DNA of 64,000 bases from Takakia lepidozioides (Eukaryota; Plantae; Bryophyta). Positions 11,758 to 61,900 of the stretch are shown piece by piece (the stretch's first letter is position 1; the number at the start of each line of letters is the position of its first letter). The position numbers and the translations under genes are program-made. The DNA lies in the NCBI GenBank assembly GCA_030704615.1, contig CM060732.1, positions 28,396,001 through 28,460,000 on the forward strand, in the 5' to 3' direction. A model generated the notes under the pieces. It saw nothing but the letters and a program-made list of their open reading frames with translations. It was not told where the DNA came from and made no database searches.

Positions 11758-11922
11758 GATTGGGACCAGAGATTCCAGAGGCCTTTACCAAGAAGGCTGC
11801 GGCTGTGCACAAGCATTTGGAAACGAATTGCAAGGACAAGGACTTCAAGTTCCGGCTGATTCTCATTGAGAGTTGGGGCGCGTTGCTAGAAGCACAAACG
11901 AAGTTTGCCCCAACTGGAAGTA
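11758..11922 (+). pseudogene. RPS13: 40S ribosomal protein S13 (uS15) exon fragment
   Basis: GLGPEIPE...[28 protein letters not shown]...PNWK after a cacag acceptor. It matches RPS13 [42 protein letters not shown] with deletions. Confidence 0.85.
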
Positions 11923-32867: not shown

Positions 32868-35347
32868 TTGAAGCACAGAAGTCGATACGACTTCATCCAT
32901 GACAGTGTTTTCCCAGGACAGGGGTCCCAAAAAGTATACTCTCAAAGAAACCCGATCGTAGAGACCGGAACGTTGAATTCCACAGTTGCGGAGGGTTCTG
33001 GAGTTAGCCTGGTGCGTAGAATGCAGGCCAGGGGTGATCTTCATAAGTCCTGGGTAATGTTTGATCACGTGAAGCGAGTGAAGGATTGGACGACCATGGC
33101 CTGTCATGTGTATGATCCTACATACCAGCGAGTTATGACTATTGCTATTTGTGACATGCAGTCGGAGGACACAGAGTCCCAAATTCTTATGTGGAAGGCT
33201 CTAGTTAACGTCATGAGAGTTCATGGTTTGCCAGATGCAAATTTCACAGGGTTCATGGCAGACAACGCACAAGCTAATTGGAATGTTGTGCGGACTGTGT
33301 TTGGCTCTGGTGACCCAAAAATACCAATGCAAGGCCGGGAACGCACTTGCCTCTTTCATTGGACCCAGTCCCTTCGACGGCACACAAAAAATTCCATAAA
33401 ATTGGAGTTGCAAGAGGAGCACCTGCGACTATGTCGTCTATACAAAGATGCCACCACAGAAAGGGAAGCAAATGCCATGTTTCAGACTATCAGAGCATGG
33501 TGGTACTCCTCTGAGGCGGCGAGTTTGGAGGGGATCCAAGAGCTAGAAGACTGGTTGGGCTTTTGGCACTTCAGATACAGACAGTGGGGTGCCTTCATGA
33601 CCGCTGTAAGTTAGACTCATACTACCATGATTTTCAAAACTTCTTATATATATGGGGGTGTGCATCAGCGACCTTGCTGTCCAGTCCAGTCCAGTCGAAT
33701 GCTGCTCCCCATAACAATGGCATTTGTGTGGCATTTACCTGCAGAATATGTCACTGGAAGACATTGCGGATATGCCATCCTGCAATCTTGCGGAGACTGT
33801 TCATAGTATGTGGATGGCGCAATCTGGTAAGAACAGCCGGAACCTTTACGTTGCAACTGCAGATGACCTTATCCGCGCTCTTTCGCAACAAACAAAGTAC
33901 CGAGACTTCCTCAGGGGACGGGGTGTTGGTAAGGGCCGGACAGGGCAGAGTTGTTGCTCAGGGCTGCTAACAGATGCAAGCATCCTGCAAAAATGGCTCG
34001 GGCTGTTAACGAGTACACGATTGGAACACCTTTGCAGTCCAGGCTCCCACATCTGGAAGGTGAGGAGAGATTCGGATCATGCAAGCGCAAACTGGACACC
34101 CCTCCAGGATCGGCGGGTGACTCCCATCGGCATGATAGAGATAATTTCTCCATACCTCGTGTGCATGTGCCACCCAATTTTGGATGTACTACTCCATCTG
34201 TGGATGCAGGTTGTTCTGCAGATTTCGATGCAACATATGCCACAGCTCCGGCACGGGAAGAAGGACGGACGTTGCTGCCGGTGGAGGAGACGGATTGTGG
34301 TGATGCAATGTGGCACATAGAATGGACTCCGAAAGGATCGAAAGTTGGTTGTTCTGCTATCAGGGCACTGTCTTTTGTGAAGTGCACAAGTAAAATTTGT
34401 AGAGGCACTGGCGGGACTCCAGCACCGACATTCACAGGTTTGTTCAAATATTACTCAGCGCGGGAGTCTAGACCTCACAAGTTCTGGTTCTGTCCCGATG
34501 ACATTCAGCGTTGTGTGATGGGGACTTGTCGGGAGTCAGTCATCAGCAAGCCTACCATCCCTGTTGTCTGGCCAGTCAAGGTCGGAACATCTCTCTCCAA
34601 ACAAGAGATTGACATGTTGGAGGATGCAGGGTTTCGACTTCCAAGAGGCCCAACAGTCCTAACACCAACATCATCTCGTGGTACGCCATCCGCATTCCCT
34701 GCACGTCCACCACATAGGAACGACTGGCCAACGAAAAGGAATGGAAAACCGGTTCGACGTGTTGAGTGAAGACATCTTAATTCGTCATTCCCTGATAAGG
34801 GTTACAACTCCCCCTATGATTTTTTCCAGGCCACATTTTTCTTCTTGCAACGATTTCCATGGGTTCATTTCTCATTCTGAGCATGCGATTTAAGATGTCG
34901 TTGACGACACCTTAATGCCTGGTGCATGCGCTTGATGATCCCTCAGGAGACATGCTCATACAGTCCTCCATAGAGTCCTCCATAGACCCCTCATCTGGAC
35001 AACTTCTCATCCGTGCTTTATCCAACGTTCATCCAGAACACTTTTACGTTCATCCCAAATCCATTCATCCGTGAATGTATCATCATGCATTCGTGCCACT
35101 TTCTCGTCATGGAGCCTATCTGTCTTCGGTCCGATGGAGCGGAGACTACGTCTTTGCAGTGAAGTTGGCATCCACGGAAATAGGCACACTTGTTCCCACG
35201 GTTTTGGGGTCCAGCGCGAAAGCTGCTCACGCTTTGATTCTGCTCACGCTTTGATTCTGCTCACGCTTCGGGGAATCTGCTCACACATCCAGGAATCTGC
35301 TCACAGGTTCTGCTCACGGCTTTGTTGCCCTCCCCATCCTCTCCATA
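32868..35347 (+). mobile_element. MULE-type DDE transposase fragment with one intron (33606-33744) and a repeat-rich end
   Basis: FDHVKR (D), FMADNAQANW (D), CLFHW (CxxH) and, after splicing, CNLAETVH (E). A Cys-rich C-terminal region follows, then TCTGCTCAC subterminal repeats at 35223-35318. Confidence 0.7.
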
Positions 35348-36277
35348 GTTATTAGACCGGAGCAGTCTGGCTTCTTAAAAGGAAGAACGATTCTTGATAA
35401 CATCTTTCTAGTCAATGAGGTCATGCATAAGGCTAAGTGCTCAGAGCAGCCCCTGGCTTTGTTAATGCTTGATTTTTAAAAAGCTTTTGACAATATTGAC
35501 TGGGGATTTCTGAACCAAGTCCTCATCAAAATAGGGATGCCACGGGCCTTTAACAGATGGGTTAATCTCCTGCTCACTTTGGCATCCAGTAAAGTTACTG
35601 TGAATGGTGCCATCTCCAAAATCCTTCGCTCTCTACAGATCTATAAGACAATAATGCCCTCTATCCCCATACCTGTTTCTCATAGCGGCTGATGCTCTGG
35701 GCCACTACTTTGCGGCAAGGCAGGACATTGCAGGCCTAAAAACAGATGATGGAGCCTCAATCAAGGTCTCCATGTATGCAGATGACACTACATTGTTTCT
35801 CAACAATGAAGACCCAGTCAACATAATGCGTGTCAGAGAAGCCCTGCAATTGTTTTGCGAAGCCTCGGGTCTCAAAATAAATTGGAACAAATCGGTTGAT
35901 CTGTTTACGGAGATGCCTGCTACCTCACGCCTCAGCACGGACCTAGATGGGGTCAGGACATAGGGCTCAAGTGGCTCCAGCCGGGAGAGGCACATACGCT
36001 GTTGGGCTTTCAAATTGGTATAGGGCTAACCGACGATCAGCGTTATGAACACATCTTACAAAGGCTTCGTAACAAGCTAGCATTATGGAGCTCCGCGATG
36101 CTATCAATTGCAAGTGCCTTGGTCTTGAGCCAGATCCTGCTTGCATCCATTTGGTATCCGGCCTCAGTCTGGTCCCCAGGTTCCACGCTCATTGCAAAAA
36201 TGAAGACCATGACGAGGAATTTCATGTGGGGTGCCTCCCCTCAACACCCCTCGAAGAAAGCCCTGGTCTCATGGGCT

Positions 36278-37261
36278 TGTTAGAGGACTGTCGGGGACTT
36301 AGACACTTATACGGGATCTGTAGGGTACCCTTAATTTTTGCACAGACTGAGACCAAGAGGAACCTTAGGGGTGACAGCAGCGCACTGTAGAGGGGGGTTA
36401 CACAGCCCAACACAGTCGTCACAGTCGTCACAGCCAACACAGCCAACACAGCCCGTCACAGTCGTCACAGCCGACACAGCCAACACAGCCCGTCACAGTC
36501 GTCACAGCAGACACAGCCAACACAGCCCGGCACAGCCACACAGCCAGTCACAGCCCGACACAGCCAAACACAGTCGCACAGCCAGTCACAGCCCGTCACA
36601 GTTTCACACAGCCAGTCACAGCTTGACACAGCTGTCACGATCATAGGGAACGAAGAGTAGGACAGGGAACGACTGTGGGGAACAACACCTGCGAAGGGAA
36701 CATGTTAGTTCACAGACGACGGTTAGCGAGGGAAACGGTTAGAACCGCGGAGAGGAAGATAAAGGGAGAAACGGGGAATTGAGGATCATCATTCGGAGGA
36801 GGACTTCTTGTCATGAAGGAGAGGGGATCGGGCAGAGATGAAGAACGGAAGTGAAGATAGAGAGATGATGAGTAGATGCTTGATATATGCAAGGCTGTAA
36901 TGATATTGTAGAGCAGATTAGAGACACAATGGCTTCGGCCTGATACCTGATAAATCATAATCGGATACTTTTACGATACAATCACACTGTGTAGAGAGAT
37001 CTGAGTGAAGCTGTGAATTGAATGGATGAGCTGATGGAATCCAATAGATTGATAAAGCAAACTGATACTTAATTATCAATGGTAAGATAGCTAACATGAA
37101 TACCAAAAGGGAAACAAATAGGAAACACCCCCATGATACACTAGCTGTAGGTCATGACTGATTGTTCTGCGCGGGCTGAGTACTTAGAGATTTCCAACTC
37201 TTCTATCTTGGAGTTTCCGCCTCGAATAGCGAAGGGATGGGTGAGTAAAAGCCGCGCGACA
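36278..37261 (+). repeat. 5' LTR (984 bp) with a CACAG-rich tandem array at ~36400-36640
   Basis: TG...CA termini, immediately followed by the PBS; near-perfect reverse complement of 48738-49841. Confidence 0.92.
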
Positions 37262-37849
37262 TTTGGCGACCATACTGGGGACCTGGGACATGAACAACCA
37301 GATGTGACAGGCATCTGGTGGGATCATGGTGGTTGGACCATTAAAGAATTTGAAGTGAATCAAATTCCCTGTGGAACGAAGGAAGAAAGATTGTCCAAAC
37401 AATTCTTTCAAAGGTTCTTGGAATTGCCAGACGGTTGTAAAGAAAATATTCTTAAGCGAGTGCATGATGCTGATCCAGAATGGGGTCTGGAGAAAAGAGT
37501 GATAAAGATTTATCAGGTAGCCTGTAGAGGAAGAGCACGTTGGTTACCAACATTGGTTTATGTGATAGCATTGCTATCCATTAAACGAGTAGAGTTTGAA
37601 GGCTGGGAAGAAAGAAAGGTGAATGTTTATACTCATATGCATGAAGAGCTTGTACTGGTAAAGAATTGGATTCCAAAGGATATTTTGTGGATCAAACTCA
37701 CACCAAGAACAGCTTTTCAGACTTGTTTGCCATATGGTTATATGGTAACGGAGACTTCAAGTATAGCCAAGGGTGCATTGAAGCTTGAAAGAAACCCAGG
37801 CATATACGAGAGATATTACAGAAGAGAGTTTTGGTTATTGCCACATTAA
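37154..37849 (+). CDS. Accessory pre-gag ORF of the Gypsy element (unknown function; F-box-like motif)
   Basis: 231-aa ORF that begins inside the LTR and spans the PBS; contains FLELPDGCKENILKRV. The true start is uncertain. Confidence 0.4.
   Translation: MTDCSARAEYLEISNSSILEFPPRIAKGWVSKSRATFGDHTGDLGHEQPDVTGIWWDHGGWTIKEFEVNQIPCGTKEERLSKQFFQRFLELPDGCKENILKRVHDADPEWGLEKRVIKIYQVACRGRARWLPTLVYVIALLSIKRVEFEGWEERKVNVYTHMHEELVLVKNWIPKDILWIKLTPRTAFQTCLPYGYMVTETSSIAKGALKLERNPGIYERYYRREFWLLPH
37264..37282 (+). promoter_or_regulatory. Primer-binding site (probably tRNA-Arg type)
   Basis: TGGCGACCATACTGGGGAC, 2 nt after the LTR end. TGG is the complement of the tRNA CCA end. Confidence 0.75.
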
Positions 37850-37870
37850 AAGAAATGAAAGACATGGGAC

Positions 37871-40281
37871 ATGAGTGATGAAAGAGAAGCTAGACGACGG
37901 AGATATTCAGCAAAAAGAGAAAGCTATCTGAAAGCTAATTATCCATATCTTTGGGAGAGAGGAATAGACATAGGGGAATCATCTGGACCTCTCACACCAT
38001 CAAGATCAAAAAGTGCATCACCTATACCGGAAGAACTAGAGTTGGATGCCACTCCTTCTGTTTCTTTGCAAGAAAGATTAAGGGAATTGGTACAGGAAGA
38101 AGATCAATCACGAGGTGAAAGATCTGAGGTACATCCTTGGATAAAAGACTTGACAGAAATCTTTGATAAGAGTTAGCATGGAACACCAAAAGCAGGAACT
38201 CCAGTTTCTGAAGCAGAAGGTGAAGAAGGAGAAGAGGATGTGGCAGAGCCAACGGAGAGTTCAGACTCTCCAACACCATTACAGTTGAGTTACATGAGTG
38301 AAGAAGAAACCCAAGGGCAGAACTTGGAGGATGAAAACAGAGAGAAGAAATTAGAAGAGGAAGAATATGAAGAAGTAGACCCAACAGCTGAGGTTGAGAC
38401 TACAACCAGGACATCCCAACCCGTTGGACCTGGATCAAGTGGAGCACTTGGATCACAGGCCAACGAAGGTGTCGGCTCAGGGGGATCAGGCGGGCTGCCT
38501 GGATCTGGCTCTGGGGGGACAGGGAGTGTGGAAAGTAGTGCAACTGAAGCTGGGAATACTGTGAATATCGTGGGGCCAGAAGCAAGGAGTGCTCAAGGGC
38601 CACCACTTGGTGGAAGATCCACCACAAAAACAACAGGTCCAGAAGGACCAGCACCAGCAAGGGTGCCAGCACCTGTCAGTGGGCAGAAGGTAGGGCCACG
38701 GATGGCGTTACAACCAACACGGGCAAAACCACCCTTTCCAATATATTCAGGAAAAGGGATCCCGATGTACACATTAGCCAATTTGAGCACATGTGTATAG
38801 TGAACAATGAGAATGGCGATGATGCCAAGATGAGACTGTTTCCTTGTTCACTTATCAAGAAAGCAAGTGAATGGTATGCAAGATTCCCTGATAATCATTT
38901 CCTAACCTGGAATGGCTTGAATACAACATTTCGAAATAGGTTTAGGACAAGTAAAACTGAGGATGAAGTGTATGGAAGTTTACAACAGCTGAAGCAGAAG
39001 AAGCATGAAACTGTTGAAGAGTATATGGAGAAATGGAATTGATGATGAAAAAGCTGGCTGCAGTACCAGCGCCCGGGTTACAGAAGACTTGGTTTGTGAG
39101 TGGACTAAGACCAGAGTTGCAAAAGAAAGTGGATATGTTACCCCATAATACAGTGGAGGAGGCATTTGAAACTGCGAACAGAATTGAGCAATTGGGAATG
39201 CTCAGGAGAGAGAAAAAAAGAAGATGAGGACTCTGAGGATGAGTCAGATGAAGAAGAAGAGCAAGAACTAAAGAGAAAGAGTAAGAGAAAGGAGAAGTTG
39301 AAGAGGGGTAACTATGAAAAAAAATTGGAAGAAATCTTGAAGAAGTATGCCACAGAGGCTGCAACACATTGGAGGAAGGGTGTATGGTGTGCAAAGTGTC
39401 AGAATGAAGGCCATACCACCACAGAATGCCACATGAAGGAGAAACACTGTACTATCCGTAAAATGGATAACCATTCTACTGAGAATTGTTACTACAACAG
39501 AAGGACAGCTGCAAGAGAACCTAGGCAAGTAAGGGTGCATCAGGTGCAGCCCCAGCCAAGAAGAAACAATGATCAGGACCACTATGGTAGGTCTGGTGGT
39601 TATAACAATGGCATGGAAGGGAGAGGCAATTCAAGAGGGAATTACCAAGGAAATTCCAGAGGCAACTATCAGGGTAATCCAAGGGGGAATTACCAGCCCG
39701 GGAATCAGGATTATAGAAATAATCCAAGAACAGACCAAGGGCGAGGACCCAATGGTGAAGAGCTATGTTACTATTGTAATCAGCCAGGACATCGCAAGGC
39801 AGCCTGTTCATTCTGGATAAGACACCAGAATGAGATGAGAGCTCCTGTGAATGAGGGCCCAGTGGTGGCAGCTCACATGGTTAGGCCATGTGTTGTACCA
39901 GAAGTAAGTACAATGATAGTAACAAGAAGTAAAGCCAAACTAATACCTCCAGTAGAAGAGGAAGAAGATGAGACTGGAAGTGGCAATGATATGCCTGAAG
40001 ATGAAGAGACTTGGAAAGATGAGAAGGAACTGCACAAGGAAGTGGCAGATACTATAAGGGAAATGCAAAAGAGTACTGATATTCCTGTGGCAGATTCCTC
40101 TGATTCGGATGGAGAAAAAGAAGGGAGTGAGGAAGAAAGGAAAAAAGAAGATGCAGACATGCAAAGTAATGAAGAGACTTTGGCTGAAGTAATATGTCAG
40201 ACCAAAGCAGAAATTACCATTGGACAGCTATTAGTTGTGGCACCTTATTGTAGGCACAGGCTGTATCAAGCAATCAATTGA
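37871..40281 (+). pseudogene. gag: gag with long acidic/Gly-rich N-terminal extension (one in-frame stop and several frameshifts)
   Basis: FPIYSGK..DPDVH, MRLFPCSLIKKASEWY, LKQKKHETVEEY, FVSGLRPE, three CCHC-type knuckles (CAKC..GH....C, a degenerate second, CYYCNQPGHRKAAC). Confidence 0.85.
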
Positions 40282-40320
40282 ATTGCCCAAGAGACAGGAA
40301 ACACAGACCTGAACAGCAAG

Positions 40321-43300
40321 GTGACCAGTTATAATGTGAAGCCGGAAGGGCGAGAACCAGTCATGGACTTTGATGATTCTATGCCAGTAATCCAATTGAG
40401 AATTGGAAGCACAGAACTAACTGATGTACTGATAGATGGTGATTCTGGAGTAAATATCATGACAGACCAATTAAGGAAGAAGCTTGGTCTAAGTAACATG
40501 AAACCAGCCCCATTTACAGTAACAATGGCAGATCAAAGAAGTGTACAACCATTGGGATTAATAAGAGGAGTTAAGATACAGATACAGAAAATGATCTTTA
40601 TGATCACAGTAACTGTATTAAAAATGGATGAAGTCATGGAGGCTTACTCCTTATTATTGGGACGTCCGTGGCTGAAACAGGCCAGGGTATTCCATGACTG
40701 GAATTCTCAGTTACTAACCGTGCATAATGGGATACACGAGATACAAATTACCACAAAGAAATCTAGTAGATTACCTGCTACAAGAAGACCTCGAGGAGTC
40801 AGAGAGTATGACTGGAGAGGAGGACTGGATGAGGAGCAGGAAGCTACCCTATTTGCTGCACACCCAGAGTGGGAGCAGGTTGCAGAGATGCGGCTGGAAA
40901 GCCTAAGTTGTTTGAGAGGTATCTGCTGTGGTGTAGTGACAGCAACACCAACTGAAGAAGAAACCAGCATTTACCCATCACATTTCTATGAAGAAAGAGA
41001 AGGAGAAATAGAGATCCTAGAAGAACCAGCCACTGTGAGCTTACAGGATGAAGTGGTGACTGGTTGGACAATCACAGCTGATGAGCAGGTGAGAGAAGTA
41101 AATGTGGGAACTAAAGAGGAACCGAGGATGGTGAAAGTAGGAGCTGATTTGGAGCCGGAATTCTTCGAAGAAGCTAAAAGCTTGTTCATCAAATACAGAG
41201 ATGTATTTGCTTGGAGCTATGAGGATCTAAAAGGGATACCACCTGAAGTCTGTCAGCATAAGATTGAACTGGAACTAGGGTCAGTACCAATCAAGCAGGG
41301 GAGGTATAGAATGAATCCCAACTACGCACAGAAGGTTGGAGAAGAGATAAAGAAGTTGGCTGAGGCTAAGTTTATATACCCAATAGAGTATACAACTTGG
41401 TTGTCACCCATTGTTATAGTTCCCAAGAAGAATGGCAAACTAAGAGTATGTGTGAACTATAAGAAGCTGAATGCTTGTACGAAGAAAGATCCATTCCCTT
41501 TGCCATTCATAGAAGCAGTATTAGACACTGTGGCAGGCCATGAGATGTACTCATTCATGGATGGCTTCAGTGGTTATAATCAAGTGCAAGTGGCAGAAGA
41601 AGACCAAGGGAAAACAGCTTTCATCACAGACTGGGGGGCTTATGCATACAAAGTCATGCCCTTTGGACTTTGTAATGCACCAGCGACCTTTCAGAGAGTG
41701 ATAAGTGAATCTTTTCATGAGTATCTGGATGATTTCATGCAGGTGTTCTTGGATGATTTCAGTGTGTACAGCTCTAAGAATGAGCACTTGCATAAATTGG
41801 AGTTATGCCTGGCCAGATGCAGGATGAGAGGTCTGGGCTTGAATCCAGAGAAGTGTACTTTCTGTGTGAACTCAGGGGTGCTTCTGGGACACATTGTGTG
41901 TAAGAAGGGATTCTTGTGGATCCCAGGAAGACAGAGTCCATTAAAGCCTCTCCACCACCAGTGAATGTTAAGAGTTTAAGGAGATTCCTTGGGCAAACCA
42001 GTTATTACAGAAGATTTGTCAAAAGGTATGCACAAATAGCAGCACCATTGAGCAAGCTTCTGAAGAAAGATGCAGTGTTTGCCTGGACAGCTGAATGTCA
42101 ACAGGCGTTTGAGGAACTTACACTGTCAGTAACAACTACACCTGTGCTGATTAACCCTCACTGGCATGTAGTATTTCATGTTCACTGCGATGCATCAGGA
42201 GAAGCGTTGGGAGCGGTGTTAGCCCAGAATGTTACAGGAAATATAGATTCACCTGTGTACTATGCTAGCAGGTTGATGAACAGTGCTGAAAGGAACTATA
42301 GCACAACTGAAAGAGAAGCATTGACAATGATTTATGCAGTCAAGAAATTCAGGCATTACCTATTGGGAAGAAAGTTTATGTTTTATGTGGATCACCAGGC
42401 TCTGATATATCTGGTGAACAAACCTTTGATAAGTGGAAGGATAGCGAGGTGGTTAATAATCTTGCATGAGTTTGAGTTCGAGGTTATTTACAAGCCTGGC
42501 CGTTTGCATCTTGTGGCAGATCATTTGTCACGACTAACAACAGGAGAGGCCGCCACAGGAGTGGACGATCAGTTACCTGATGCGAGTTTATTTGTAATGG
42601 AGGTGCAAGGAAGTGCAGATGAATGGTTAGATTGGCAGTGGCCAATCAGATACTACCTTGCTCATGGTCAGTGCCCACCTAGTTATGGTAAGGAGCAGAG
42701 GAAGAGAATCGCTATCAAAGCTTTACCTTATACTATGGTAGGAAGCAGAATGTATAAGTTAGGACCTGATGGAGTACTAAAACGATGCTTGTACCACCAT
42801 GAAGTAAATAAAGTTTTGGCGGAAGTTCATAAAGGAGTGGCTGGAGGTCATTTTGGAGAAGAGACTACCAGTAGAAAGATACTACTCGCAGGATACTGGT
42901 GGCCTACTTTGTTCAAAGATGTACACGAGTATTGTCAGAAGTGTGATGAATGTCAGAGGCTAGGACCTTTGCAGAGATCTGGAAGGATGGCCTTGCATCC
43001 TACAATGCCTACGGAACCATTTCAGAAATGGGGACTAGACTTTGTTGGACCAATTAACCCACCATCCAAGAATACACGAAACAGGTACATAATTACAGCC
43101 ACTGATTATACTACAAAGTGGGTGGAAGCTAAAGCTTTGAGGGACAACACAGCCAAGTCCACAGCAAGGTTCCTGTACGAGAACATACTTACAAGATTTG
43201 GCTGTCCCTTAGAATTTATCAGTGATCAAGGAAGTCACTTCATGAATGCGACCATTGAGTTGTTGACTAAAGAGTTTATGATTGTGCATAGAAAGAGTAC

Positions 43301-44423
43301 AACATATTACCCACAGGGTAATGGGCAGGCAGAGGCTACCAACAAAATACTATGTACTATCTTGGCTAAGATAGTCAATGCAAACAGAACGGATTGGGAT
43401 ACAAAGCTGCTGACAGCTTTGTGGTCATACAGGACTTCATATAAAGTCACCACTAAGTATACACCATTCCAATTAGTTTATGGTATGGAAGCCTTACTTC
43501 CAGTGGAATTCCTGTTACCTACCATGAGAACGGAGTGGGGAAAAAGAATGGAATTGCAAGACTCCATCAAGGTCAGGAAACATGAATTATACCATGTGGA
43601 AGAAGTACGTGCTGATGCAGCTGATAATATGACCAGAATTCAGATGAAGCGAAAGGAACAGTTTGATGAAGGCAAGTTAAAGACTTTTAAGACGGGGGAT
43701 TTGGTTCTATGGTTGCAGAAGAAAGGAAAGATTCAAGCTTCTAAGCTTAAATCACCGTGGAAAGGACCTTATGTCATACAAAAGATGTATGATAACAACA
43801 CCGCCATGTTACAAACCATTAACAAAGAAATGCTGGGAAGAGTCAATGCAAATAAGTTGAAGGGGTACAGTGGTATCCATGACAAACCCCTGCAGCATGA
43901 TTTGCATGTTGAACCGCAAGAGCAGTCACGGGCTGCACCAGTGTTACGAACGGAGTATGGAACACTTGTCGCTAGGCCCAGCATATATGACCAGGGTGGG
44001 CAAAACAAACATGACACATCCTATCACAGCCCATCAAGGCAAAGCACAGCCTATCACAGCCCATCACGACGTGAGACAGCCTATCACAGCCCAGCAAGGC
44101 GCAACATAGCCTATCACAGCCCATCACGACGTGACACAGCCTATCACAGCCCAGCACGGCGCAACACAGCCTATCACAGCCCATCACGACGTGACACAGC
44201 CTATCACAGCCCATCACGACGTGACACAGCCTATCACAGCCCAGCACGGCGCAACACAGCCTATCACAGCGACGTGACACAACCTATCACAGCCCAGCAA
44301 GGCGCAACACAGCCTATCACAGCAGCACAGCAACACAGCCTATCACAACCTACCACAGCGTGTCACAGCCTATCACAGCTTACCACAGTGCATCACAGCC
44401 TATCACAGCGTAACACAGTATGA
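40321..44423 (+). pseudogene. pol: pol: protease, RT, RNase H, integrase (frameshift near 41915)
   Basis: VLIDGDSGVN, LRVCVNYKKLN, MPFGLCNAPATF, FLDD, CDASG, ERNYSTTEREAL, HHCC, WGLDFVGP/SDQGSHF/NGQAEATN, WKGPY. Confidence 0.92.
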
Positions 44424-44450
44424 CACAGCCTGTCACAGCTCAACACAGTC
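44010..44450 (+). repeat. 30-bp tandem array (ACAGCCTATCACAGCCCATCACGACGTGAC-like), decaying at the 3' end
   Basis: About 8 clear copies, translated in the integrase frame as TAYHSP(S/A)RR(D/N). Confidence 0.9.
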
Positions 44451-44925
44451 TACTAAAGTTACACGATCCATAGAATCAGTGACAAGTGGACACATAATAA
44501 CTTCAGGAAAATGGCTGACGGAAGAGGAAACGGAAATTACTTTAAAAATGGACATGTGGAGGTCGGGGCGCGACACACAGCCGAGAAGGAAGTGCAAGAA
44601 CAGGTGTCAAAAAGAAAGAGGACAAGAACGGCCGTCAAAAGGGATGAAAGGCGGGCCCATTAATGAGTACGGAAAAAGGGAAACGGAACGAACGGCAAGT
44701 ACAGAAAAGCGGAATTCTTGTCACATGTGTGATCCTAGTGGACTATCCAACAGGGAAAGTCCACTAAAGAAGATAAAATCTAAAATCCAGTCACAGCGGA
44801 TACAACCAATAGAAAACCAGAGAAAGGATCAAGAAAATGGAGGGAAATTGAGCGCAAGAGGCGGCGTCGTTCTGAGTAACGGGCGTCTCGACAGGACAGA
44901 CCATCAATGCTATACCTTGGAAACT

Positions 44926-47900
44926 ATGGAGGAACTAACAGACTATACGCTCGCAATATTACTTACGCAGTGGCATAGACACGAAAGGACAGAGCGGAGC
45001 TTTTCTCTTGAGCGATGCTTGCAAGCCCCGCAGGCTTACAAGAAATTACCCATAGCTTTCTGCGACAACCATACGTTTATGCTTTGTGCACTACAGGCAT
45101 TCCTGCAGTTGTTACAGCCAAAACAGTTCTGTGAGTCTAAAATGAAGAGAGTGAGAGGAATGGAGGAAATCAGGGTGAAGAGCACCACAATTCTGCAGAA
45201 ACAAACGATTGCTACCCCACAGGCGATACAGATACTGGAGGAGCTGAGATTGCAAGGATTGCAAAGCCTAGATTGGACACTACACCATAGACAGTACATG
45301 TTACAATTTTTGCAGAACTTTGAGCCAAGGACAGGAACAACAACGGTGAAGGGAGTTGAATTAATGATTACTCCCCTATACCTCCAGCAATTGTTTCGAT
45401 TGCCAGCAGGTCAGGTGCATGTGGAGCAACACAGGGCAAGACTGCAAATAGAGGACTTATTCCAAGAAGGGAGTTTCTTTAAAACTCAGGGTTATGCTTG
45501 TACCAAGGCTGTGTACCCAGGGTTAAAAGAGGTAGGCCAGGTATTGAACGTTCTGATTGCCATGAAACAGAACCAACAGTATTTGAGCAGATCCTTCACG
45601 GAGGAAATACTCAAAGGCCTGAAGGGACGAGAGGTACAATGGGCGGACATAATGTACAACGCACTGGTAGAGGAGATGAAAAGATTACAAGGTACTACCG
45701 CAAAGTCTCCTATAATAGTGTCTGGCCCAATCATTGCTCAAATAATCCTTGATTCTTGCATACTTAATGCGCAAGAAAGAAAGGAAATGGGAGTGTTTGA
45801 ACCAGCAACAACTACAATGGAAGAGCAAGGCTCTTCACACAGTGAGGGTGGAGTAGCAGGGCAACCCGAGACTAAGAGGCAGAGACGGGGAAAGACTGTA
45901 GTGGCGGATCCACTGGCTTCACGGATTCCGCATGATAATGTTTCCCAAGCTCATGGCCAGGAAGGGGCACACCAGCACAGAGAAATGCTATTACTGGAAG
46001 CAGGACCTTCAGAGAGGGAGGAGGAAGTTACTTCTGCATCACAACCATCACAGCCACCTGAACGACTTGTCACAAGGTCACAAGTTATCCATGCAGCTCA
46101 ACCAGAAATAATTGATTTGGAAAGTGAAGGGTTAGATATTCCAACTACAGAACAAATAGTGGCAGAAATAGAGAAGGGGGACCTTCTCTATGAATATTCT
46201 GGTCTGGTCAAGGAGACAGAAATCCCAGAGGTGCAACAGTTGCCCAAGGGAAATCCTGAGGTGCATATAATACACACACCTGTGTCGGAGGTACCACAGA
46301 CGGAAAGTCATGACACTGTAGCACCGGTGATAGAGGAAGTAGTTCAGGAAGAAAATCCGGTGGGACAATGGCCTGAATGGTTAGTGAGACATCACACTGT
46401 TGAAGATCAGGAGGAACAGCAGCAACCTCACCATGATGACCCTCAACAGGCAATGCTGATGAGTTCCATAGGCAGGACACTTAATTTGTTGGGGACTTAT
46501 GTCAAATCCCATGTTCCAATTACCCAATTGACAGCCTTGAGAGAGGAACTCAGGAAGGAGTTTGAGGCTCGACTTGCCACTGAGTGTGCAAACAAGGTCG
46601 ATGAAGAGGTCACTCTCAAGATGAAGCAGGACTTGGGAAATACAGAAATGGCTTTGCAATTGGCCAAGGAACAATTGATTGAGGCAGGCCTCGCGCAAGA
46701 CCAGTTGCACGAAGCACATAAGCAACAGCTATACCAAATGCAGGTGCAGCATGAAAGCAAGTTGCAAGAACTGAATGCACTACATACGGAGTTGCAGACA
46801 GTGCATAACAGGATGACGATACAATGTGCTACATTTACAACTATGCTTGACCAATCTACAAAAGAAATAAACAGTCAAGCGGAAAAATGTACGAAGGCAG
46901 AAGAAGAGAATGTTGAGCAAATGAAGCTCATTATAGATATGAAGAATACAATCTGTCGCAATGAAGATACTTTCAAGCAATACAGGCAGATTGAAGCTGA
47001 TCAAGAGAAGCACATCGTGGAGTTGCAACAAACCATCATGGCCAATAGAAATGAAATCGTGGTCAATAACAAGGCTTGGAAGGAAGCCAATAATCTACTT
47101 GCTGCTTATGCGCAATTGGTTGAACCTCAGGCAAAGCGCATGGAGGCTTTACAACAGCAATTGGAATTGTACAAGCTAAGGGAGGAGCAAACTCTCAGGG
47201 GAACCACAAGCAACTTGGTAGATAACAGCCTTATGCAGGTCTGGTTAGCACAAGGGCCAGTAGAGGGCAAAGCACCACGGAAGCTCACCCAAAGCGAGAC
47301 GAATGAGCTCAGGCTGCAGGTGCAGAACATTGCCACAACTACTATAGACAATGTCTATAGTAGGATAGCAGAGTTACAAGAGGATGTAGACGGACTCCAG
47401 ACTCAAGTGGAAGAACTCACTTCAAACATCGGCCAAAGAGTCTATATCCCTCAGGAACAGCTAATGGCTTCTTATTTACAAGCCAGAACTTTGGCTTTTC
47501 AGTCTTCACAGGAGGTGCAGGAGATGCCAATGATACAAGAGCCAGTACCACCACCACCACAACAAGTCACTGTACCAGTAGTTGAACCTGTGGTTACTAC
47601 AACCACACCACAGCCACCACAGCCGGAGGTATGGGGCAATGCCGCTTTTAACCCACCTAAAACTCCAGCTGCAAGGGAGTACAGTAGGGCTATGATTATG
47701 CCCTTCAACCAAATTCCCATCATGTTGGATTTGGCTTGGAAAGAATTTAGTCCTCCGCAGTCATTCGCACATTACTACCAAATTATGCGTATTTGGCTGC
47801 CAGTGGCAACTAGGACTAAAGTTCTTCCGAACAATCGACATATTGAAGATCATCACTTTGCACAATACTGACACGAGGCGGGTACCATGTTGAGGGAATT

Positions 47901-48693
47901 GATTGCTTTCCAGGTTGTACATGGACTCATTTATACCAAGACCAAGGAGATAGCAAGTATTGTCATGGGGTGCGGGTTATACTACGCTGCTTGTTTTCTG
48001 GTACGTTACCACATTGAGCAACAAAAGATGCAAACACGCTTTCTGAGTTATTCCAGTGGAGATCATTGGGTATTACCTTCGGTGCCACCTCATATGTACC
48101 TATATGACCCAAAAGTTATGATGCAAAAGGATTCTCAAATTCGTTCATGGTTTCAAGCGGCCTGGAACCATTTGTCAACACAGAAATTCGGCATTGATGA
48201 CATTTTCTATAAGGGACATGTGGCATGGAAGTACTTGCACGCTGCACCAGTAATTGGTACCCCACTCACCTGGACAGACAAGGAGCTCAGTGTCTACACC
48301 AATTTTGCTGTTCAGCGGTTACACCAAGTTGTAAAATACAAACTTCCAGACATGGTAGGACAGCATTGTATGCCCCAGATGATTCCACAAAAAGTTCGAA
48401 AATTAAAACACCTGAGAGGTGATGAGGATTCTGATACAACTGTTTCTTCACCGAATTCTTTTGACATGGGAGAAGACTATGCAGTTCAGATGGCAGAGAA
48501 GAAGCGAAGGGGGTCTCCTATGCCGGAAAGGTTACCTCCATATCAGCCTCCAGAGGGCCTCACTTATCCAGGTAGTGATCAACCATCTCCGTCAACCAGA
48601 GACAGACCTCGGGCTCGTACACACAGTCCGCCACGAAACTCTCAACGTCAAGAAGGTGCTCACTCACAAAGGTTTGCTAGTCGAAATCAGTAA
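44926..48693 (+). CDS. Large accessory 3' ORF ('env-like' position), ~1250 aa, coiled-coil, with one premature TGA at 47869
   Basis: ORFs 44479-47871 and 47887-48693 are in frame; the sister copy has W at the stop. Conservation with the sister copy begins at MEELTDYTL. The N-terminal QFLQNF...VKGVEL.ITP..LQQLF.LP motif is typical of plant-TE accessory proteins. Confidence 0.8.
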
Positions 48694-48694
48694 A

Positions 48695-48728
48695 CCGTGA
48701 GGACACGGCTTTTTGAGGGGGGAAGGGG
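48695..48728 (+). promoter_or_regulatory. Pre-PPT hairpin plus polypurine tract
   Basis: CCGTG-AGGA-CACGG, then CTTTTT, then GAGGGGGGAAGGGG. The same arrangement occurs in the second copy (59907-59943, minus). Confidence 0.85.
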
Positions 48729-48737
48729 TAAACAAAA

Positions 48738-49841
48738 TGTCGCGCGGCTTTTACTCACCCATCCCTTCGCTATTCGAGGCGGAAACTCCAAGATAGAAGA
48801 GTTGGAAATCTCTAAGTACTCAGCCCGCGCAGAACAATCAGTCATGACCTACAGCTAGTGTATCATGGGGGTGTTTCCTATTTGTTTCCCTTTTGGTATT
48901 CATGTTAGCTATCTTACCATTGATAATTAAGTATCAGTTTGCTTTATCAATCTATTGGATTCCATCAGCTCATCCATTCAATTCACAGCTTCACTCAGAT
49001 CTCTCTACACAGTGTGATTGTATCGTAAAAGTATCCGATTATGATTTATCAGGTATCAGGCCGAAGCCATTGTGTCTCTAATCTGCTCTACAATATCATT
49101 ACAGCCTTGCATATATCAAGCATCTACTCATCATCTCTCTATCTTCACTTCCGTTCTTCATCTCTGCCCGATCCCCTCTCCTTCATGACAAGAAGTCCTC
49201 CTCCGAATGATGATCCTCAATTCCCCGTTTCTCCCTTTATCTTCCTCTCCGCGGTTCTAACCGTTTCCCTCGCTAACCGTCGTCTGTGAACTAACATGTT
49301 CCCTTCGCAGGTGTTGTTCCCCACAGTCGTTCCCTGTCCTACTCTTCGTTCCCTATGATCGTGACAGCTGTGTCAAGCTATGACTGGCTGTGTGAAACTG
49401 TGACGGGCTGTGACTGGCTGTGCGACTGTGTTTGGCTGTGTCAGGCTGTGACTGGCTGTGTGGCTGTGTCGGCTGTGTCGGCTGTGTCTGCTGTGACGAC
49501 TGTGACGGGCTGTGTTGGCTGTGTCGGCTGTGACGACTGTGTTTGGCTGTGTCGGGCTGTGACTGGCTGTGTGGCTGTGCCGGGCTGTGTCGGCTGTGTC
49601 GGCTGTGTTGGCTGTGACGACTGTGACGGGCTGTGTTGGCTGTGTCGGCTGTGACGACTGTGACGGGCTGTGTTGGCTGTGTTGGCTGTGATAACTGTGA
49701 CGACTGTGTTGGGCTGTGTAACCCCCCTCTATAGTGCGCTGCTGTCACCCCTAAGGTTCCTCTTGGTCTCAGTCTGTGCAAAAATTAAGGGTACCCTACA
49801 GATCCCGTATAAGTGTCTAAGTCCCCGACAGTCCTCTAACA
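48738..49841 (-). repeat. 3' LTR in inverted orientation (1104 bp)
   Basis: Reverse complement of 36278-37261. The 62-aa and 82-aa shadow ORFs are identical on opposite strands, and the tandem array is 120 bp longer. Confidence 0.92.
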
Positions 49842-50507
49842 GGGCTCAGCTCTGTAGGCCTCGCAAGGAAGGAGGGCTGGGCTTGCTGGATCCAGCTCTG
49901 CAAATTACGGCATTACTTGCAAAATGGATCCCTAGGTCGCTCACCAATGAAGGCAGGCCTTGGTGTAACTTAGTTCGAGAACACCAGGTTCGATCTTTCC
50001 CGGCAAATTCCACAACTTGGGCACCATCTCTCAAGTGGATGATGCATGGTCATGGGAAGACGAAAAAAGTTGGGCTCTGCAGCTTGGACCTCTATATGGG
50101 ATGCCCGGAGGATAATCCGACCTCATCTCACCCAGAGAAGAGCCAAATGCTTTGAGGAGGCTGTCAGGCAGCCCTTATTTGGCAATCTTCATCTGGATTA
50201 TGGCCCTTTGGCCTTGCTTCACAAACGATGGGCTACCAGGGAGGCAAAAGGACTCTCTCATATTGCGAGAGCTCCTATTCTGTCAGTTACCAACGCAATT
50301 CCATCAGTGACGAAGGTCAACGAAGGTGAACAAGAACATTTCAATCTGCCCAACGAACTTGCCCGGAAAAAAATGAATTTTAGAGTTTGAAATCGAATAA
50401 AAGATCGCATTCCAAAAAGCGAAAAGTACCTTATACAAGGACACAAGAGCTACCTTCGTTCAACTTAGGTCCAACAAATATATATATTTTTTGCCAGACA
50501 ACCAACA

Positions 50508-57999: not shown

Positions 58000-58987
58000 T
58001 ACTAGCAGCAGCCTATATTTGTTCTAGGAAACACCCAACTCAGCTTATCACACTAGTTCCTATGCTGATATTGCGTCTGCTACTCTCTGAAATGTAACAG
58101 GCATTCACCTTTTTGCCTCAGTTGTCCCACCATTGACTGGGGTAAGAAAAGTAATCATTCCACAGCTTCTCGTCATTTGCCCCTAGGTCTCCAAAGCCTC
58201 ATCCCGCGCCCTTGTTATGCATATCCTGCAATCATCACTCCACAATACCACATATCGTTCAGCCATACTGTTGAACACTCCCTTTGCATCCTCAATGCAC
58301 CCACATTTGGCATACATGTCCACCAGGGCAGTGTTCAAAATGACAGGTGCAATTGCAGATTTGATGATGTCATCATGCATCTCTTTGCCCTTTTCCAGGG
58401 TTGCCAGGCTTGCACAAGCATTGCAAACACACAAACGTGATCTGGTTACATTTCACCTCTTCCCCCCCTCATTTGCTCATAGGTCTTGCCTCCATCTCGC
58501 GCCCCTGCTGTGCATATCCTGCAAGCATGGCATTCCATGACACCATATCTTGTTCAGCCATATTATCGAACACTCCCTTTGCATCCTTGATGCACCCACA
58601 TCTTGGATACATGTCCACTAGGGTATTGTACTTCAGAATGACATCGGGTACAATCCAGCTCTGACAATGTCACTATGGACCTCTTTGCCTTTTTCCAGGG
58701 CTTCCAGGCTTGCACATGCATTCCAAATGCACACAAACGTGATGTGTTTGGGCTTCACCCCTTCCCCCATCATTTGATCCTAGGTCTCCAAAGCCTCCAT
58801 ACCAAGTCCCTGCTGTGCATACTCTGCAAGCATCGCATTCCACGACACCACATCTCATTCAGCCATAGTGTTGAAAACTCCCTTCGCATCCTTAATGCAC
58901 CCACATTTCGCATACATGTCCACTAGGGCAGTGTTCAAAATAACATCTGGTACAATTCCAGCTTTGACGATGTCAGCATGGACCTCT
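58000..58987 (-). pseudogene. PLS-class PPR gene, frameshifted and truncated by an LTR insertion
   Basis: Repeated EVHADIVKAG...VILNTALVDMYAKCG.I.DAKGVF..MAE.D.V.WNAMLAGYAQQG units with frameshifts; cut at 58988 by the LTR. Confidence 0.85.
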
Positions 58988-61900
58988 TGTCGGGCGGCTT
59001 TTACTCACCCATCCCTTCGCTATCCGAGGTGGAAACTCCAAGATAGAAGAGTTGGATATCTCTAAGCACTCAGCCCGCTCAGAACAATCAGTCATGACCT
59101 GCAGCTAGTGAATCATGGTTGTGCTTCATATTTGTATTCCTTCTTGCCTTCATGTTATCAATTTACCTTACCGTGTATACTGAAGCATCAGATTGCTTCA
59201 GTATCTACTAAGTTCCAGTTAATCATGCATTCATCCCACAGCTTCACTCATGTCTCTCTACACAGTGTGATTGTATCGAATAAGTATCAGATTATGATTT
59301 ATCAGGTATCAGGCCAATGCCATGGTGACTCTAATCTGCCCTACAATATCACTACAGCTTTGCATGTACAAGCATCTACTGTTCATCTCTCCTCCTCTCC
59401 GTGCTCTCATTCTTGCTCTCCGCCTGATCTCCTCTCATCCATGACCAAGAAGCACTCCCCGTGAAGTCCCCTCTTCCTGTTGCCGTTCTCCTTAATCTAC
59501 CCCCAAGCTGTTCTAACCACCTAACTAACTAACCGTCACCCCTGAAGTAACACGTTCCCCCTGCAGATGTCGTTCCCACACAGTCATTCTCTGTCAATGA
59601 TAACTGTTCCCCATGTACTGTGACAGACTGTGTCAAGCTGTGCCGAGCTGTGACTGGCTGTGTAAAGCGGGCTGTGACTGGCTGTGTGAAGCTGTGTCAG
59701 GCTGTGCAAAGCTGTGGCGGCTGTGACGGGCTGTGTGAAGCTGTGCGAAACTGTGGCGGGCTGTGTAAAGCTGTGTCGGGCTGTGTAACCCCCCTAAAGC
59801 CTGCTGCTGCCACCCCTAAGGCTCCTGTTGGTCTCAATCTGCGCAAAAATTAAGGGTACCCCACTGAACCCGTAAAAGCGTCTAAGTCCCAAGCAGCCCT
59901 TTAACATTACCCCTCCCCCTCTCAAAAAGCCGTGTCCTCACGGTTTACTTTTTGGGATTAGCAAACCTTTGTGAGCGAGCACCCTTCTGACGGTGAGAGT
60001 CTCGCGAAGGACTCTGTGTGCGAGCCTGAGTCCAGTCACTGGTGGATGGAGATGATTGAGCACTACCTGGAAATGTCTGACCCTCCTTTGGCTGATAACG
60101 AGGTAACCTCTCAGGCATAGGAGATCCCCGTTGTTTCTTCTCTGCCATCTGAAGTGCATAGTCCTCTGCCATGTCAAAAGAGTCCGCTGAACAAATAGTA
60201 GTATCAGAATCCTCGTCCCCCCTTAGGTGTTTTAACAGCCGAATTTTAAGTGGAATCTTGTGTGGCATACAATGTGGTCCCACCATGTCTGGAAGTTTAA
60301 ACTGTACAACTTGTTGTAAGCGTTTGCAAGCAAAATTAGTGAACGTCCTGAACTCCTTATCTGTATAGGTAAGAGGTGTGCCAATGACTTTGGAACAGTG
60401 TAAGTATTTCCAGGCTTCATGTCCCTTAAAGAAAATATCCTCAGGGCCAAATTTCTGTGTTGTCAAACTGTTCCAAGCCGAATGAAACCATGTACGAAGT
60501 TGGGAATCCTTTTGCATCATAATTTTTGCATCATATAGGTACATATGAGGTGGCACTGAAGATAAGACCCAATGATCCCCACTGGAATAACTCAGAAATT
60601 GCGATTGCATCCTCTGCTGCTCAATGTGATAACGTGCCAGAAAACAAGCAACATAGTATAAGCCACAGCCCATGACAATACTTGATACCTCATTGGTCTT
60701 GGTATAAATGTACCCATGTACAACTTGGAACACAATTAATTCCCTTAGCATGGTACCTGCTTCAGACCAGTACCTCGCAAAGTGATGATCCTCAATGGGT
60801 CGATTGCTCGGAATAACCTTAGTCCGAGTTGTCACCGGCAACCAAATGCACATGATCTGGTAGTAATGTGCCAAGGACTGCGGAGGACTTAATTCCTTCC
60901 AAGCCAAATCCAACACAATGGGAATTTGGTTGAAGGGCATAATCATAGCCCGACTGTACTCTCGTGCAGCAGGAGTCTTAGGTGGGTTAAAAAGCAGCAT
61001 CTCCCCATACCTCAGGTTGTGGTGTGGCTGTAGTAACAATAGGGTCAGCTACTTGCACAACCACCTGCTGTGGTAATTGTACCACTGACCCTTCTACCAC
61101 TAGCATCTCCTGTACCGGTATCTCCTGCACCCCCTACAAAGAAGATTGAAAAATTAGAGACCTGGTATGTAAATAAGTAGCCATGAGCTGCTCCTCAGGA
61201 ACAAAGACTCTCTTGTCAATATTTGAACTCAGGTCATCCACTTGAGTCTGCAGACCGTCCACGTCCTCCTGTAGCTCCGCTATTCTACTATAGACATTGT
61301 CTGTAGTAGTTGTGGCAATGTTCTGCACCTGCAATCTGAGCTCATTCATCTCGCCCTGGGTGAGCTTTCGTGGTGCTTTGCCTTCTACCGGCCCTTGTGC
61401 TAACCAGACCTGCATAAGGTGGTTATCCACCAAGTCGTGTGTGGCACCCCTGAGAGTTTGCTCCTCCGTGAGTCTGTACACATCTATCTGCTATTGTAAA
61501 GCCTCAATGCGCTTAGCATGAGGTTCAACCAGACTCGCATAGGCAGCAGCCAGATTATTGGCTTCCTTCCAAGCCTTGTTAGCCACAGAAAGTTCATTTC
61601 TATTGACCATGACTGTTTGTTGCAACTCCAGGATGTACCTCTCCTGGTCAGCCTCATCCTGTCTATATTGTTTGAAAGTATTCTCATTGCGACAGATTGT
61701 ATTCTTCATATCAACAATGAGTTTCGCTTGCTCTATTATCTCAGCTTCTGCCCTCATACATCTCTCTCCTTGTCTGTTAACTTCTGATGCAGTTTGCTCA
61801 AGAGTAGTTGTGAGTGTAGCATATTGTATGGTCATCTTCTCATGTACTGCCTCCAACTCTGTATGTAGTACATTCACTTCTTGCAACTTGCCCTCATGCT

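What the first reader, a model, noticed from the sequence alone, without database searches (positions are those of the whole stretch)
36273..49846. Ty3/Gypsy retrotransposon integrated with INVERTED LTRs (two U3 ends) and a clean 5-bp TSD
Seen: the element starts GGGCT|TGTTAGAGG and ends CCTCTAACA|GGGCT, and the interrupted LINE frame (LVSWA|QLCRP) rejoins exactly. The 5' LTR (36278-37261) is followed by a PBS as normal. After the PPT, however, the sequence reads GGGGTAA-ACAAAA-TGTCGCGCGG..., i.e. the whole LTR reversed (48738-49841) with 6 extra nt. The sister copy has PPT-GGGGTAA-TGTTAAAGG, so the family norm at this junction is direct orientation. Established: LTR reverse transcription makes direct repeats, and integrase uses one U3 and one U5 end. 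Inference: the structure could be an aberrant cDNA (fold-back or mis-primed strand transfer, or two-cDNA integration), a precise post-insertion flip of the LTR, or a lineage that moves as a TIR-bounded, integrase-driven element (Ginger-like). The 6-nt filler partly resembles the reversed PBS junction (CCAAA-TGTCG).
Basis: partly seen in the sequence, partly recalled or inferred. Interest (0 to 1): 0.9.

Follow-up and report, generated by a model that had tools for sequence, protein, structure and literature searches.

The report
Gypsy retrotransposon with one flipped LTR
A young 13.6-kb plant Ty3/Gypsy retrotransposon copy really does carry its right-hand LTR upside down, yet it sits in a clean 5-bp target duplication; the best reading is a rare one-off accident in which integrase joined two 'U3' ends, which has a 1988 retrovirus precedent and is not a new kind of element.

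Summary
A 984-nt 5' LTR (36278-37261) is followed by TT and a PBS. The interior encodes gag-PR-RT-RH-IN plus a large extra ORF and ends in a PPT at 48731. Then come six bases (ACAAAA) and the whole LTR in reverse complement (48738-49841). Both outer termini are the same U3 end, flanked by GGGCT on each side, and open frames of the host LINE-like sequence abut in phase across the site.

The diverged sister copy in the window and a distant relative from a metagenome contig both have normally oriented LTRs, so the flip is specific to this copy.

The inverted LTR is bounded by reverse-transcription landmarks. The U3 terminus lies outside. The U5 end plus the complement of the spacer lies inside. 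The left part stops exactly at the PPT/U3 border.

I conclude that an aberrant pre-integration DNA with two U3 ends was inserted by integrase. My preferred route is a finished cDNA broken at the PPT/U3 border, with its LTR fragment flipped and the free ends joined by the host.

A post-insertion flip, replication template switching and misassembly all fit poorly. The copy should be a replicative dead end. No census was possible. The precedent is a MoMLV provirus (Colicelli and Goff 1988). Interest is moderate.

The parts
35255..36277 (+). Left part of the interrupted host sequence, a degenerate LINE-like RT region. The last 126 codons are open and end in ...ALVSWA.
   Evidence: The LINE call rests on motif recognition only; Pfam found nothing in the stop-free pieces.
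36273..36277 (.). Left copy of the 5-bp target-site duplication, GGGCT.
36278..37261 (+). 5' LTR, 984 nt, TGTTAGAGG...GCGCGACA. The U3 contains a CACAGC-rich 9/37-nt tandem array at 36400-36632.
37262..37282 (+). TT spacer followed by the primer-binding site TGGCGACCATACTGGGGAC.
   Evidence: Relative L006 has TGGCGACTCCGCTGGGGA, also 2 nt after its LTR. No match to a tRNA gene could be tested, because the window holds no tRNA.
38869..40281 (+). gag, with a capsid-like N-terminus and a CCHC zinc knuckle. It is broken by stops at 39040-39048, 39103-39105 and 39112-39114.
40321..41964 (+). Protease (DSG motif) and reverse transcriptase.
41916..44423 (+). RNase H, integrase (H2C2 plus rve) and a proline-rich tail. 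It lies in a different frame from RT, whereas in relative L006 pol is one ORF.
44479..48693 (+). Extra 3' ORF. ORFx (1130 aa) and ORFy (268 aa) share one frame with one stop at 47869-47871. A conserved ~200-aa domain lies at about 45.2-45.8 kb.
48715..48731 (+). Polypurine tract GAGGGGGGAAGGGG plus TAA. It ends exactly where U3 begins in the sister copy.
48732..48737 (.). Six-base junction ACAAAA. ACA has no template. AAA is the complement of the TT spacer plus the first PBS base.
48738..49841 (-). Complete LTR in reverse complement, 1104 nt. The U5 end faces inward and the U3 terminus faces outward. Its tandem array at 49367-49719 is 120 nt longer than in the 5' LTR.
49842..49846 (.). Right copy of the 5-bp target-site duplication, GGGCT.
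49847..50152 (+). Right part of the interrupted LINE-like frame, starting QLCRPRKEGGLGLLD. It is 102 codons long and open.
58988..64000 (-). Sister copy, about 79% identical in the interior. Its 3' LTR (58988-59906) is in normal orientation after the PPT. It runs off the end of the window.

Best explanation
This is one defective copy of a large plant Ty3/Gypsy retrotransposon. It was inserted by the family's integrase from an abnormal DNA that carried a U3 terminus at both ends.

**Preferred route (inference).**
1. Reverse transcription finished a normal linear cDNA.
2. That cDNA broke at the PPT/U3 border of the right LTR. This is the start of PPT-primed plus-strand DNA, where a plus-strand discontinuity can persist.
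3. The freed LTR fragment then offered its U3 end to integrase together with the U3 end of the left LTR.
4. Integrase joined both U3 ends to a 5-bp staggered target, so the right LTR ended up inverted.
5. The two remaining free ends were sealed by host end joining with a 3-nt filler, ACA. These ends were the PPT end and the natural U5 terminus with its two spacer bases plus one more.

The break and flip could equally have happened before integration.

**Consequences (inference from the standard model).** An RNA started in the 5' LTR would end in antisense LTR and lack a 3' R. The copy therefore cannot complete minus-strand transfer and is a dead end. Its two inward-facing LTRs could give convergent or panhandle RNA.
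For: **Shown**
- Both outer termini are identical U3 ends next to a perfect 5-bp duplication, and open host frames abut in phase.
- The left part stops exactly at the PPT/U3 border as defined by the sister copy.
- The inverted LTR is complete to the last U5 base. It carries AAA, the complement of the bases that follow U5 in the 5' LTR, but none of the remaining PBS. That is what the right terminus of a finished cDNA should look like, and not what full plus-strand strong-stop DNA should look like.
- The U3 and U5 termini share only TGT plus G at position 9 and CT at positions 11-12, in both copies. Integrase already accepts dissimilar ends.
- The sister copy and relative L006 have normally oriented LTRs.
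- The LTRs differ by two transitions and by array length. They are therefore independent sequences of a young insertion that is not brand new.

**Precedent and feasibility**
- The title of Colicelli and Goff, J Virol 1988;62:633, describes the same structure.
- A cassette flanked by a 21-nt U3 end sequence was inserted in an HIV-1 integrase-based transgenesis assay (PMC7240061).
Against: - There is a single copy and no reads, so the assembly cannot be checked.
- The third A, and the idea that ACA is end-joining filler, are interpretations. AAA has a 1/64 chance of matching.
- A persisting nick or break at the PPT/U3 border is inferred from general retroviral biology. It has not been shown for this family.
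- The 120-nt difference in the U3 arrays needs slippage, either during reverse transcription or later. The alternative is two source molecules.
Confidence: 0.75

Rival explanations
1. A reverse-transcription error occurred inside the particle. The growing plus strand reached the PPT and switched template onto a displaced plus-sense LTR strand, a copy-back or fold-back event. This made the inverted LTR before integration, and the product was then integrated through two U3 ends.
For: It gives the same end structure, including the exact stop at the PPT/U3 border and run-off at the U3 5' end. Strand-displacing polymerases are known to make inverted chimeras (own knowledge).
Against: Plus-strand strong-stop DNA should carry the whole PBS, yet only 3 bases beyond U5 are present. 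There is no microhomology at the switch point, and ACA has no template nearby.
Confidence: 0.2
2. Two separate cDNA molecules each gave one U3 end to a single concerted integration. The host then joined their distal ends after trimming.
For: The U3 arrays of the two LTRs differ by 120 nt, which two source RNAs would explain directly.
Against: Random trimming would have to stop exactly at the PPT/U3 border on one molecule and exactly 3 nt past U5 on the other. A single break in a single molecule explains both. Outside the array the LTRs differ by only two transitions.
Confidence: 0.1
3. A normal insertion was followed by inversion of just the 3' LTR. This could occur by two breaks and rejoining, or by replication template switching that copied the 5' LTR backwards.
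For: It would keep the TSD. Short fillers are typical of end joining. The AAA could have been copied from the junction of the 5' LTR with the PBS.
Against: Both breakpoints must fall exactly at the LTR edges, with 0 nt lost at the flank side. An in-place flip would not bring AAA. A copy of the 5' LTR would run on into the complement of the left flank (AGCCC...) rather than GGGCT and the right flank. There is no microhomology at the entry point.
Confidence: 0.07
4. This is an assembly artefact and the LTR is really in direct orientation.
For: LTRs are repeats, and no read evidence is available here.
Against: Two junctions absent from a normal copy would both have to be invented: PPT-ACAAAA-U5(rc), and U3(rc)-GGGCT-right flank. 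The right junction is not the reverse complement of the left one (GGGCT versus AGCCC). The two LTRs are not copies of each other, because they differ by two transitions and 120 nt of array.
Confidence: 0.06
5. This is a lineage that habitually moves as a TIR-bounded, integrase-driven DNA element, like Ginger.
For: It has 1-kb terminal inverted repeats, a DDE integrase and a 5-bp TSD.
Against: The sister copy and relative L006 have normal LTRs. The element keeps gag, PR, RT, RH, a PBS and a PPT. This copy is coding-defective. Retroviral-type integrases are not known to excise integrated DNA (own knowledge).
Confidence: 0.03

Closest known systems
MoMLV provirus with LTRs in inverted orientation, integrated through two U3 sequences (Colicelli and Goff, J Virol 1988;62:633-636)
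   Same: It has inverted LTRs, a U3 terminus at both ends, and insertion attributed to integrase. The title is confirmed in a reference list. From memory only, that provirus also had the normal short target duplication.
   Different: That case was a laboratory retrovirus and, from memory, a terminus mutant. This one is a natural insertion of a plant Ty3/Gypsy element in a genome assembly. The paper itself could not be read, so its inner junction cannot be compared.
Ordinary Ty3/Gypsy (Metaviridae) LTR retrotransposons of non-seed plants, for example the relative on ENA contig L006
   Same: It shares gag-PR-RT-RH-IN order, a PBS 2 nt after the LTR, a PPT, TG...CA LTRs, a size of about 13 kb and an extra ORF after pol with the same conserved domain.
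   Different: The right LTR is inverted and joined through six extra bases.
DIRS retrotransposons
   Same: They are retroelements with inverted terminal repeats.
   Different: DIRS elements use a tyrosine recombinase and make no target duplication (own knowledge for the TSD). This element has a DDE integrase, a PBS, a PPT and a 5-bp TSD.
Ginger and Polinton-type DNA transposons (TIRs plus an rve integrase)
   Same: They combine terminal inverted repeats, an rve-family integrase and a short TSD.
   Different: Those elements lack RT, gag, a PBS and a PPT, and they propagate as DNA. Here all retrotransposon parts are present and the relatives have direct LTRs.
Retroviral autointegration products (inversion circles)
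   Same: Integrase action produces LTRs that are inverted relative to each other (own knowledge).
   Different: Autointegrants are circles with an internal target duplication. Here the duplication is host DNA and the inverted segment is exactly one LTR.
Mu killer-type inverted TE rearrangements that trigger silencing
   Same: An inverted terminal duplication could yield hairpin or convergent RNA against its own family (own knowledge; a possible consequence only).
   Different: No RNA or small-RNA data are available here. Mu killer derives from a DNA transposon.

Membership tests
Ty3/Gypsy (Metaviridae) LTR retrotransposon | pol domain order PR-RT-RNase H-integrase, with gag upstream | tested here: met
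   Pfam finds zf-CCHC, RVT_1, RT_RNaseH, Integrase_H2C2 and rve in that order. The DSG protease motif and the FLDD RT motif appear in the translation. The element is collinear with relative L006 gag and pol.
Ty3/Gypsy (Metaviridae) LTR retrotransposon | PBS next to the 5' LTR and PPT next to the 3' LTR | tested here: met
   TGG starts 2 nt after the LTR and resembles the PBS of L006 at the same position. The purine tract ends at 48731, and the same tract abuts U3 in the sister copy. Complementarity to a tRNA was not tested.
Ty3/Gypsy (Metaviridae) LTR retrotransposon | Two LTRs in direct orientation | tested here: not met
   The right LTR of this copy is the reverse complement. The 3' LTR of the sister copy is normally oriented after its PPT. 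L006 has two direct LTRs. This copy is therefore an aberrant member, not a different family.
Ty3/Gypsy (Metaviridae) LTR retrotransposon | Short target-site duplication (4-6 bp) made by integrase | tested here: met
   GGGCT lies on both sides.
Provirus integrated through two U3 ends (Colicelli and Goff type) | Inverted LTRs with a U3 terminus at both outer ends and a normal-size target duplication | tested here: met
   The 20 outermost bases at both ends are identical U3 sequence, and there is a 5-bp TSD.
Provirus integrated through two U3 ends (Colicelli and Goff type) | Insertion demonstrably catalysed by integrase from an aberrant cDNA | not testable with these tools
   This is inferred from exact termini plus the TSD. 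It needs experiments or cDNA sequencing.
DIRS | Tyrosine recombinase instead of a DDE integrase, and no TSD | tested here: not met
   An rve integrase is present and no recombinase domain was found. A TSD is present.
Ginger-like or TIR DNA transposon with an rve integrase | No reverse-transcription machinery, and several TIR-bounded copies | tested here: not met
   RT, RNase H, gag, a PBS and a PPT are present. The only other copies seen have normal LTR orientation. Copy number in the genome could not be tested.

The most novel reading that the evidence does not exclude
The inverted-LTR form is not a one-off. Either this family repeatedly makes and inserts U3/U3 molecules, or the TIR-bounded copy can be mobilised at the DNA level by integrase. 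That would be a living intermediate between LTR retrotransposons and Ginger-type DNA transposons.

A milder version, not excluded either, is that this single copy acts as a hairpin or convergent-transcript source that silences its family.
Probability: 0.03. Interest if true: 0.85.

Novelty: new member of a known kind. Interest (0 to 1): 0.4.

Why it matters
It is a natural, sequence-resolved example showing that a plant Ty3/Gypsy integrase can carry out concerted integration with two U3 ends. Its inner junction preserves the landmarks of the DNA intermediate, namely the PPT/U3 border and the U5 end with its spacer. Evidence of that kind is seldom available outside laboratory retroviruses.

There is also a practical point. 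LTR finders that require direct repeats will miss such copies, and TIR finders may call them giant DNA transposons with a 5-bp TSD.

If a copy like this is transcribed from both LTRs, it could feed small-RNA silencing of its own family. As a single dead-end copy it does not change how these elements are understood.

Tried and rejected
**Searches for more copies (all blank)**
- Exact-protein look-ups of ORFy, of the ORF spanning the right junction, and of the neighbouring TBCC gene found nothing on record. The source genome is therefore probably not in these collections, and no census or independent assembly of the junction was possible.
- The metagenome scan used a 19-mer just upstream of the PPT that is conserved between the two copies.

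**Other dead ends**
- The word-index search with ORFx was blank.
- Pfam on the stop-free pieces of the host LINE-like sequence was blank at E <= 1. 'LINE' therefore rests on motif recognition alone.
- No nearby template for the ACAAAA filler was found. Only scattered 8-9-mers elsewhere matched.
- The 1988 paper is not held, so only its title could be confirmed.
- Literature searches for inverted LTRs in integrase-type elements gave only DIRS papers and one passing mention of a guppy ERV.
- The fold search of the ORFx domain against the PDB gave no match.

**Explanations rejected on logic**
- Recombination between inverted LTRs elsewhere would invert what lies between the repeats, not the LTR itself.
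- A nested insertion into a solo LTR needs an exact adjacent insertion plus an exact deletion.
- A missed-adapter palindrome would invert the interior as well.
Full report
**Source.** The window is plant DNA, not human.
- It carries an AIR9 gene. The best named relatives, at about 70% identity, come from lycophytes, liverworts and ferns.
- It also carries TBCC and a calreticulin fragment.
- A PPR-like pseudogene flanks the sister LTR.
- The RH-IN region of the element is 48-62% identical to polyproteins from liverworts, conifers, ferns and unnamed metagenome contigs.
Copies were only compared and their breaks described.

**The observation.**
- The 5' LTR runs from 36278 to 37261 (TGTTAGAGG...GCGCGACA). 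It is followed by TT and TGGCGACCATACTGGGGAC.
- The interior ends in a purine tract plus TAA at 48731. Six bases (ACAAAA) follow. From 48738 to 49841 the whole LTR appears in reverse complement, U5 end first.
- The repeat finder reports inverted arms of 738 nt and 250 nt.
- A gapped alignment shows how the LTRs differ. There are two transitions (36387/49732 and 36619/49380), a few changes inside a CACAGC-rich 9/37-nt array, and 120 extra array bases in the right LTR.
- The inverted match runs three bases beyond the LTR: AAA at 48735-48737 pairs with TTT at 37262-37264.
- GGGCT flanks both ends. The outermost 20 bases on both sides are the same U3 terminus.

**The empty site.** A 126-codon open frame ends ...FMWGASPQHPSKKALVSWA at 36277. 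A 102-codon open frame starts QLCRPRKEGGLGLLD at 49847.
- With one GGGCT removed, the two frames are in phase.
- From my own knowledge, the joined motif looks like the conserved region downstream of RT in plant LINEs.
- The joined sequence has no reference, so I did not send it to any search tool.
- Pfam did not recognise the separate pieces.
- No second copy of this host sequence exists in the window.

**What the element is.**
- Pfam and the translations give gag (CCHC), protease (DSG), RT, RNase H and integrase in Ty3/Gypsy order.
- After integrase come a proline-rich tail encoded by a second CACAGC-type array (44014-44439) and a roughly 1400-codon extra reading frame.
- This copy is coding-defective. 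gag has a cluster of stops around 39.04-39.11 kb. RT and RNase H lie in different frames around 41.92 kb, whereas the relative L006 has a single pol ORF. One stop splits the extra ORF at 47869-47871.

**Family norm.**
- The sister copy lies on the minus strand at 58988-64000. It is about 79% identical in the interior and 73-77% identical in the LTR. It reads ...GGGGTAA|TGTTAAAGG and ends ...CCCGACA|AGAGG, so its 3' LTR is in normal orientation.
- A relative on an ENA metagenome contig (L006, 55% identity over RH-IN) has direct LTRs at 1-1566 and 11781-13257 and no inverted repeats. Its PBS, TGGCGACTCCGCTGGGGA, sits two bases after the LTR.
- The inversion is therefore specific to this copy.

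**Mechanism.** The key point is where the breakpoints lie.
- The left part stops exactly at the PPT/U3 border, where PPT-primed plus-strand DNA starts.
- The inverted LTR is complete at both ends. Its outer end is the U3 terminus that integrase normally uses.
- Its inner end is the last U5 base plus the complement of the two spacer bases and one more base. None of the remaining PBS is present.
- Under the standard model of reverse transcription (established knowledge), that is the right terminus of a finished linear cDNA. The minus strand starts right after the tRNA. In HIV-1, from my own knowledge, one primer base is left behind.
- Full plus-strand strong-stop DNA would instead carry the 18-nt PBS.

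One break at the PPT/U3 border of one finished cDNA therefore explains both inner boundaries. Integrase joins the two U3 ends to a 5-bp staggered target, and host end joining seals the two free ends with ACA as filler. Every step after 'two U3 ends plus a TSD' is inference.

Feasibility is supported in three ways.
- The U3 and U5 termini in this family share only TGT, G at position 9 and CT at positions 11-12.
- A cassette flanked by a 21-nt U3 end sequence was inserted in an HIV-1 integrase-based transgenesis assay (PMC7240061).
- The MoMLV provirus reported by Colicelli and Goff in 1988 has a title describing exactly this structure.

**Rivals.**
- *Template switch at the PPT during reverse transcription.* This gives the same product, but it predicts PBS sequence or microhomology at the junction. 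Neither is seen, and no template for the filler was found.
- *Two cDNA molecules.* This would explain the different array lengths, but it needs two exact trims.
- *In-place flip after insertion.* This needs two breaks exactly at the LTR edges and would not bring AAA.
- *Replication template switching onto the 5' LTR.* This would run on into the complement of the left flank (AGCCC...) rather than GGGCT.
- *Misassembly.* This would need two invented junctions. The right junction is not the reverse complement of the left one, and the LTRs are not copies of each other.
- *A TIR-bounded lineage.* The normal relatives and the retained RT machinery count against this, but it was not tested by census.

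**Consequences (inference).** An RNA started in the 5' LTR would end in antisense LTR and have no 3' R, so minus-strand transfer fails. The copy cannot propagate as a retrotransposon. The inward-facing right LTR could give convergent or panhandle RNA.

**Age.** One or two differences in about 750 non-array LTR bases point to a young insertion that is not brand new. No rate is known for this plant.

**What could not be done.**
- The source genome is probably not in the searchable collections.
- The single metagenome scan gave only unrelated hits.
- The 1988 paper is not held.

**Verdict.** It is a rare aberrant integration of a known kind, newly seen in a plant Ty3/Gypsy element. Interest is moderate.

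Noticed in passing
window 44479-48693 (+); also L006:7720-8829 and L005:11030-13507: The element carries a roughly 1400-codon extra ORF after integrase.
- Against the sister copy it shows dN/dS of 0.24 over 1318 codons, so it is a real coding region.
- Only 5 distant homologues turned up among 1.84 billion representative proteins. All of them align to a ~200-aa domain at residues ~250-450.
- That domain is shared with the extra ORFs of relatives L005 and L006.
- One homologue matches Pfam Transposase_32, 'putative plant transposon protein'.
- An AlphaFold model (pLDDT 76, pTM 0.72) has no PDB fold match.
   Followed up: partly
window 36400-36632, 44014-44439, 49367-49719, 59610-59790: Tandem arrays built on the same CACAGC motif occur in the U3 of both LTRs, in the sister LTR, and inside the element at the end of the integrase ORF, where they encode the proline-rich tail. 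Together they hold 89 of the 144 CACAGC sites in the window. The reason for the shared motif is unknown.
   Followed up: partly
window 13644-19502 (-): AIR9 (LRR, eleven A9 domains and a PH-like domain) is present as one uninterrupted 1952-codon ORF with no introns. The closest relatives, at 77-82% identity, are likewise single ORFs on short unnamed metagenome or Logan contigs. This could reflect an intron-poor lineage or a retrogene.
   Followed up: no
window 58700-58987 (-): The sister copy is inserted in a PPR-like sequence (...VSWNAML...) that contains stop codons, so it is probably a pseudogene.
   Followed up: no
window 30550-31979 (+): gag and protease ORFs of another Ty3-type element lie just upstream of the LINE-like sequence, so the region is a stack of nested or adjacent retroelements.
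   Followed up: no
window 37264-37282 versus L006:1569-1586: The PBS of this element differs from that of relative L006 at four central positions (CATA versus TCCG), while both ends of the PBS are identical. This could reflect a different tRNA isoacceptor or decay.
   Followed up: no
window 37262-38868 (+): There is a long leader of about 1.6 kb between the PBS and the start of gag. It holds two ORFs of 231 and 186 codons with no Pfam match.
   Followed up: no
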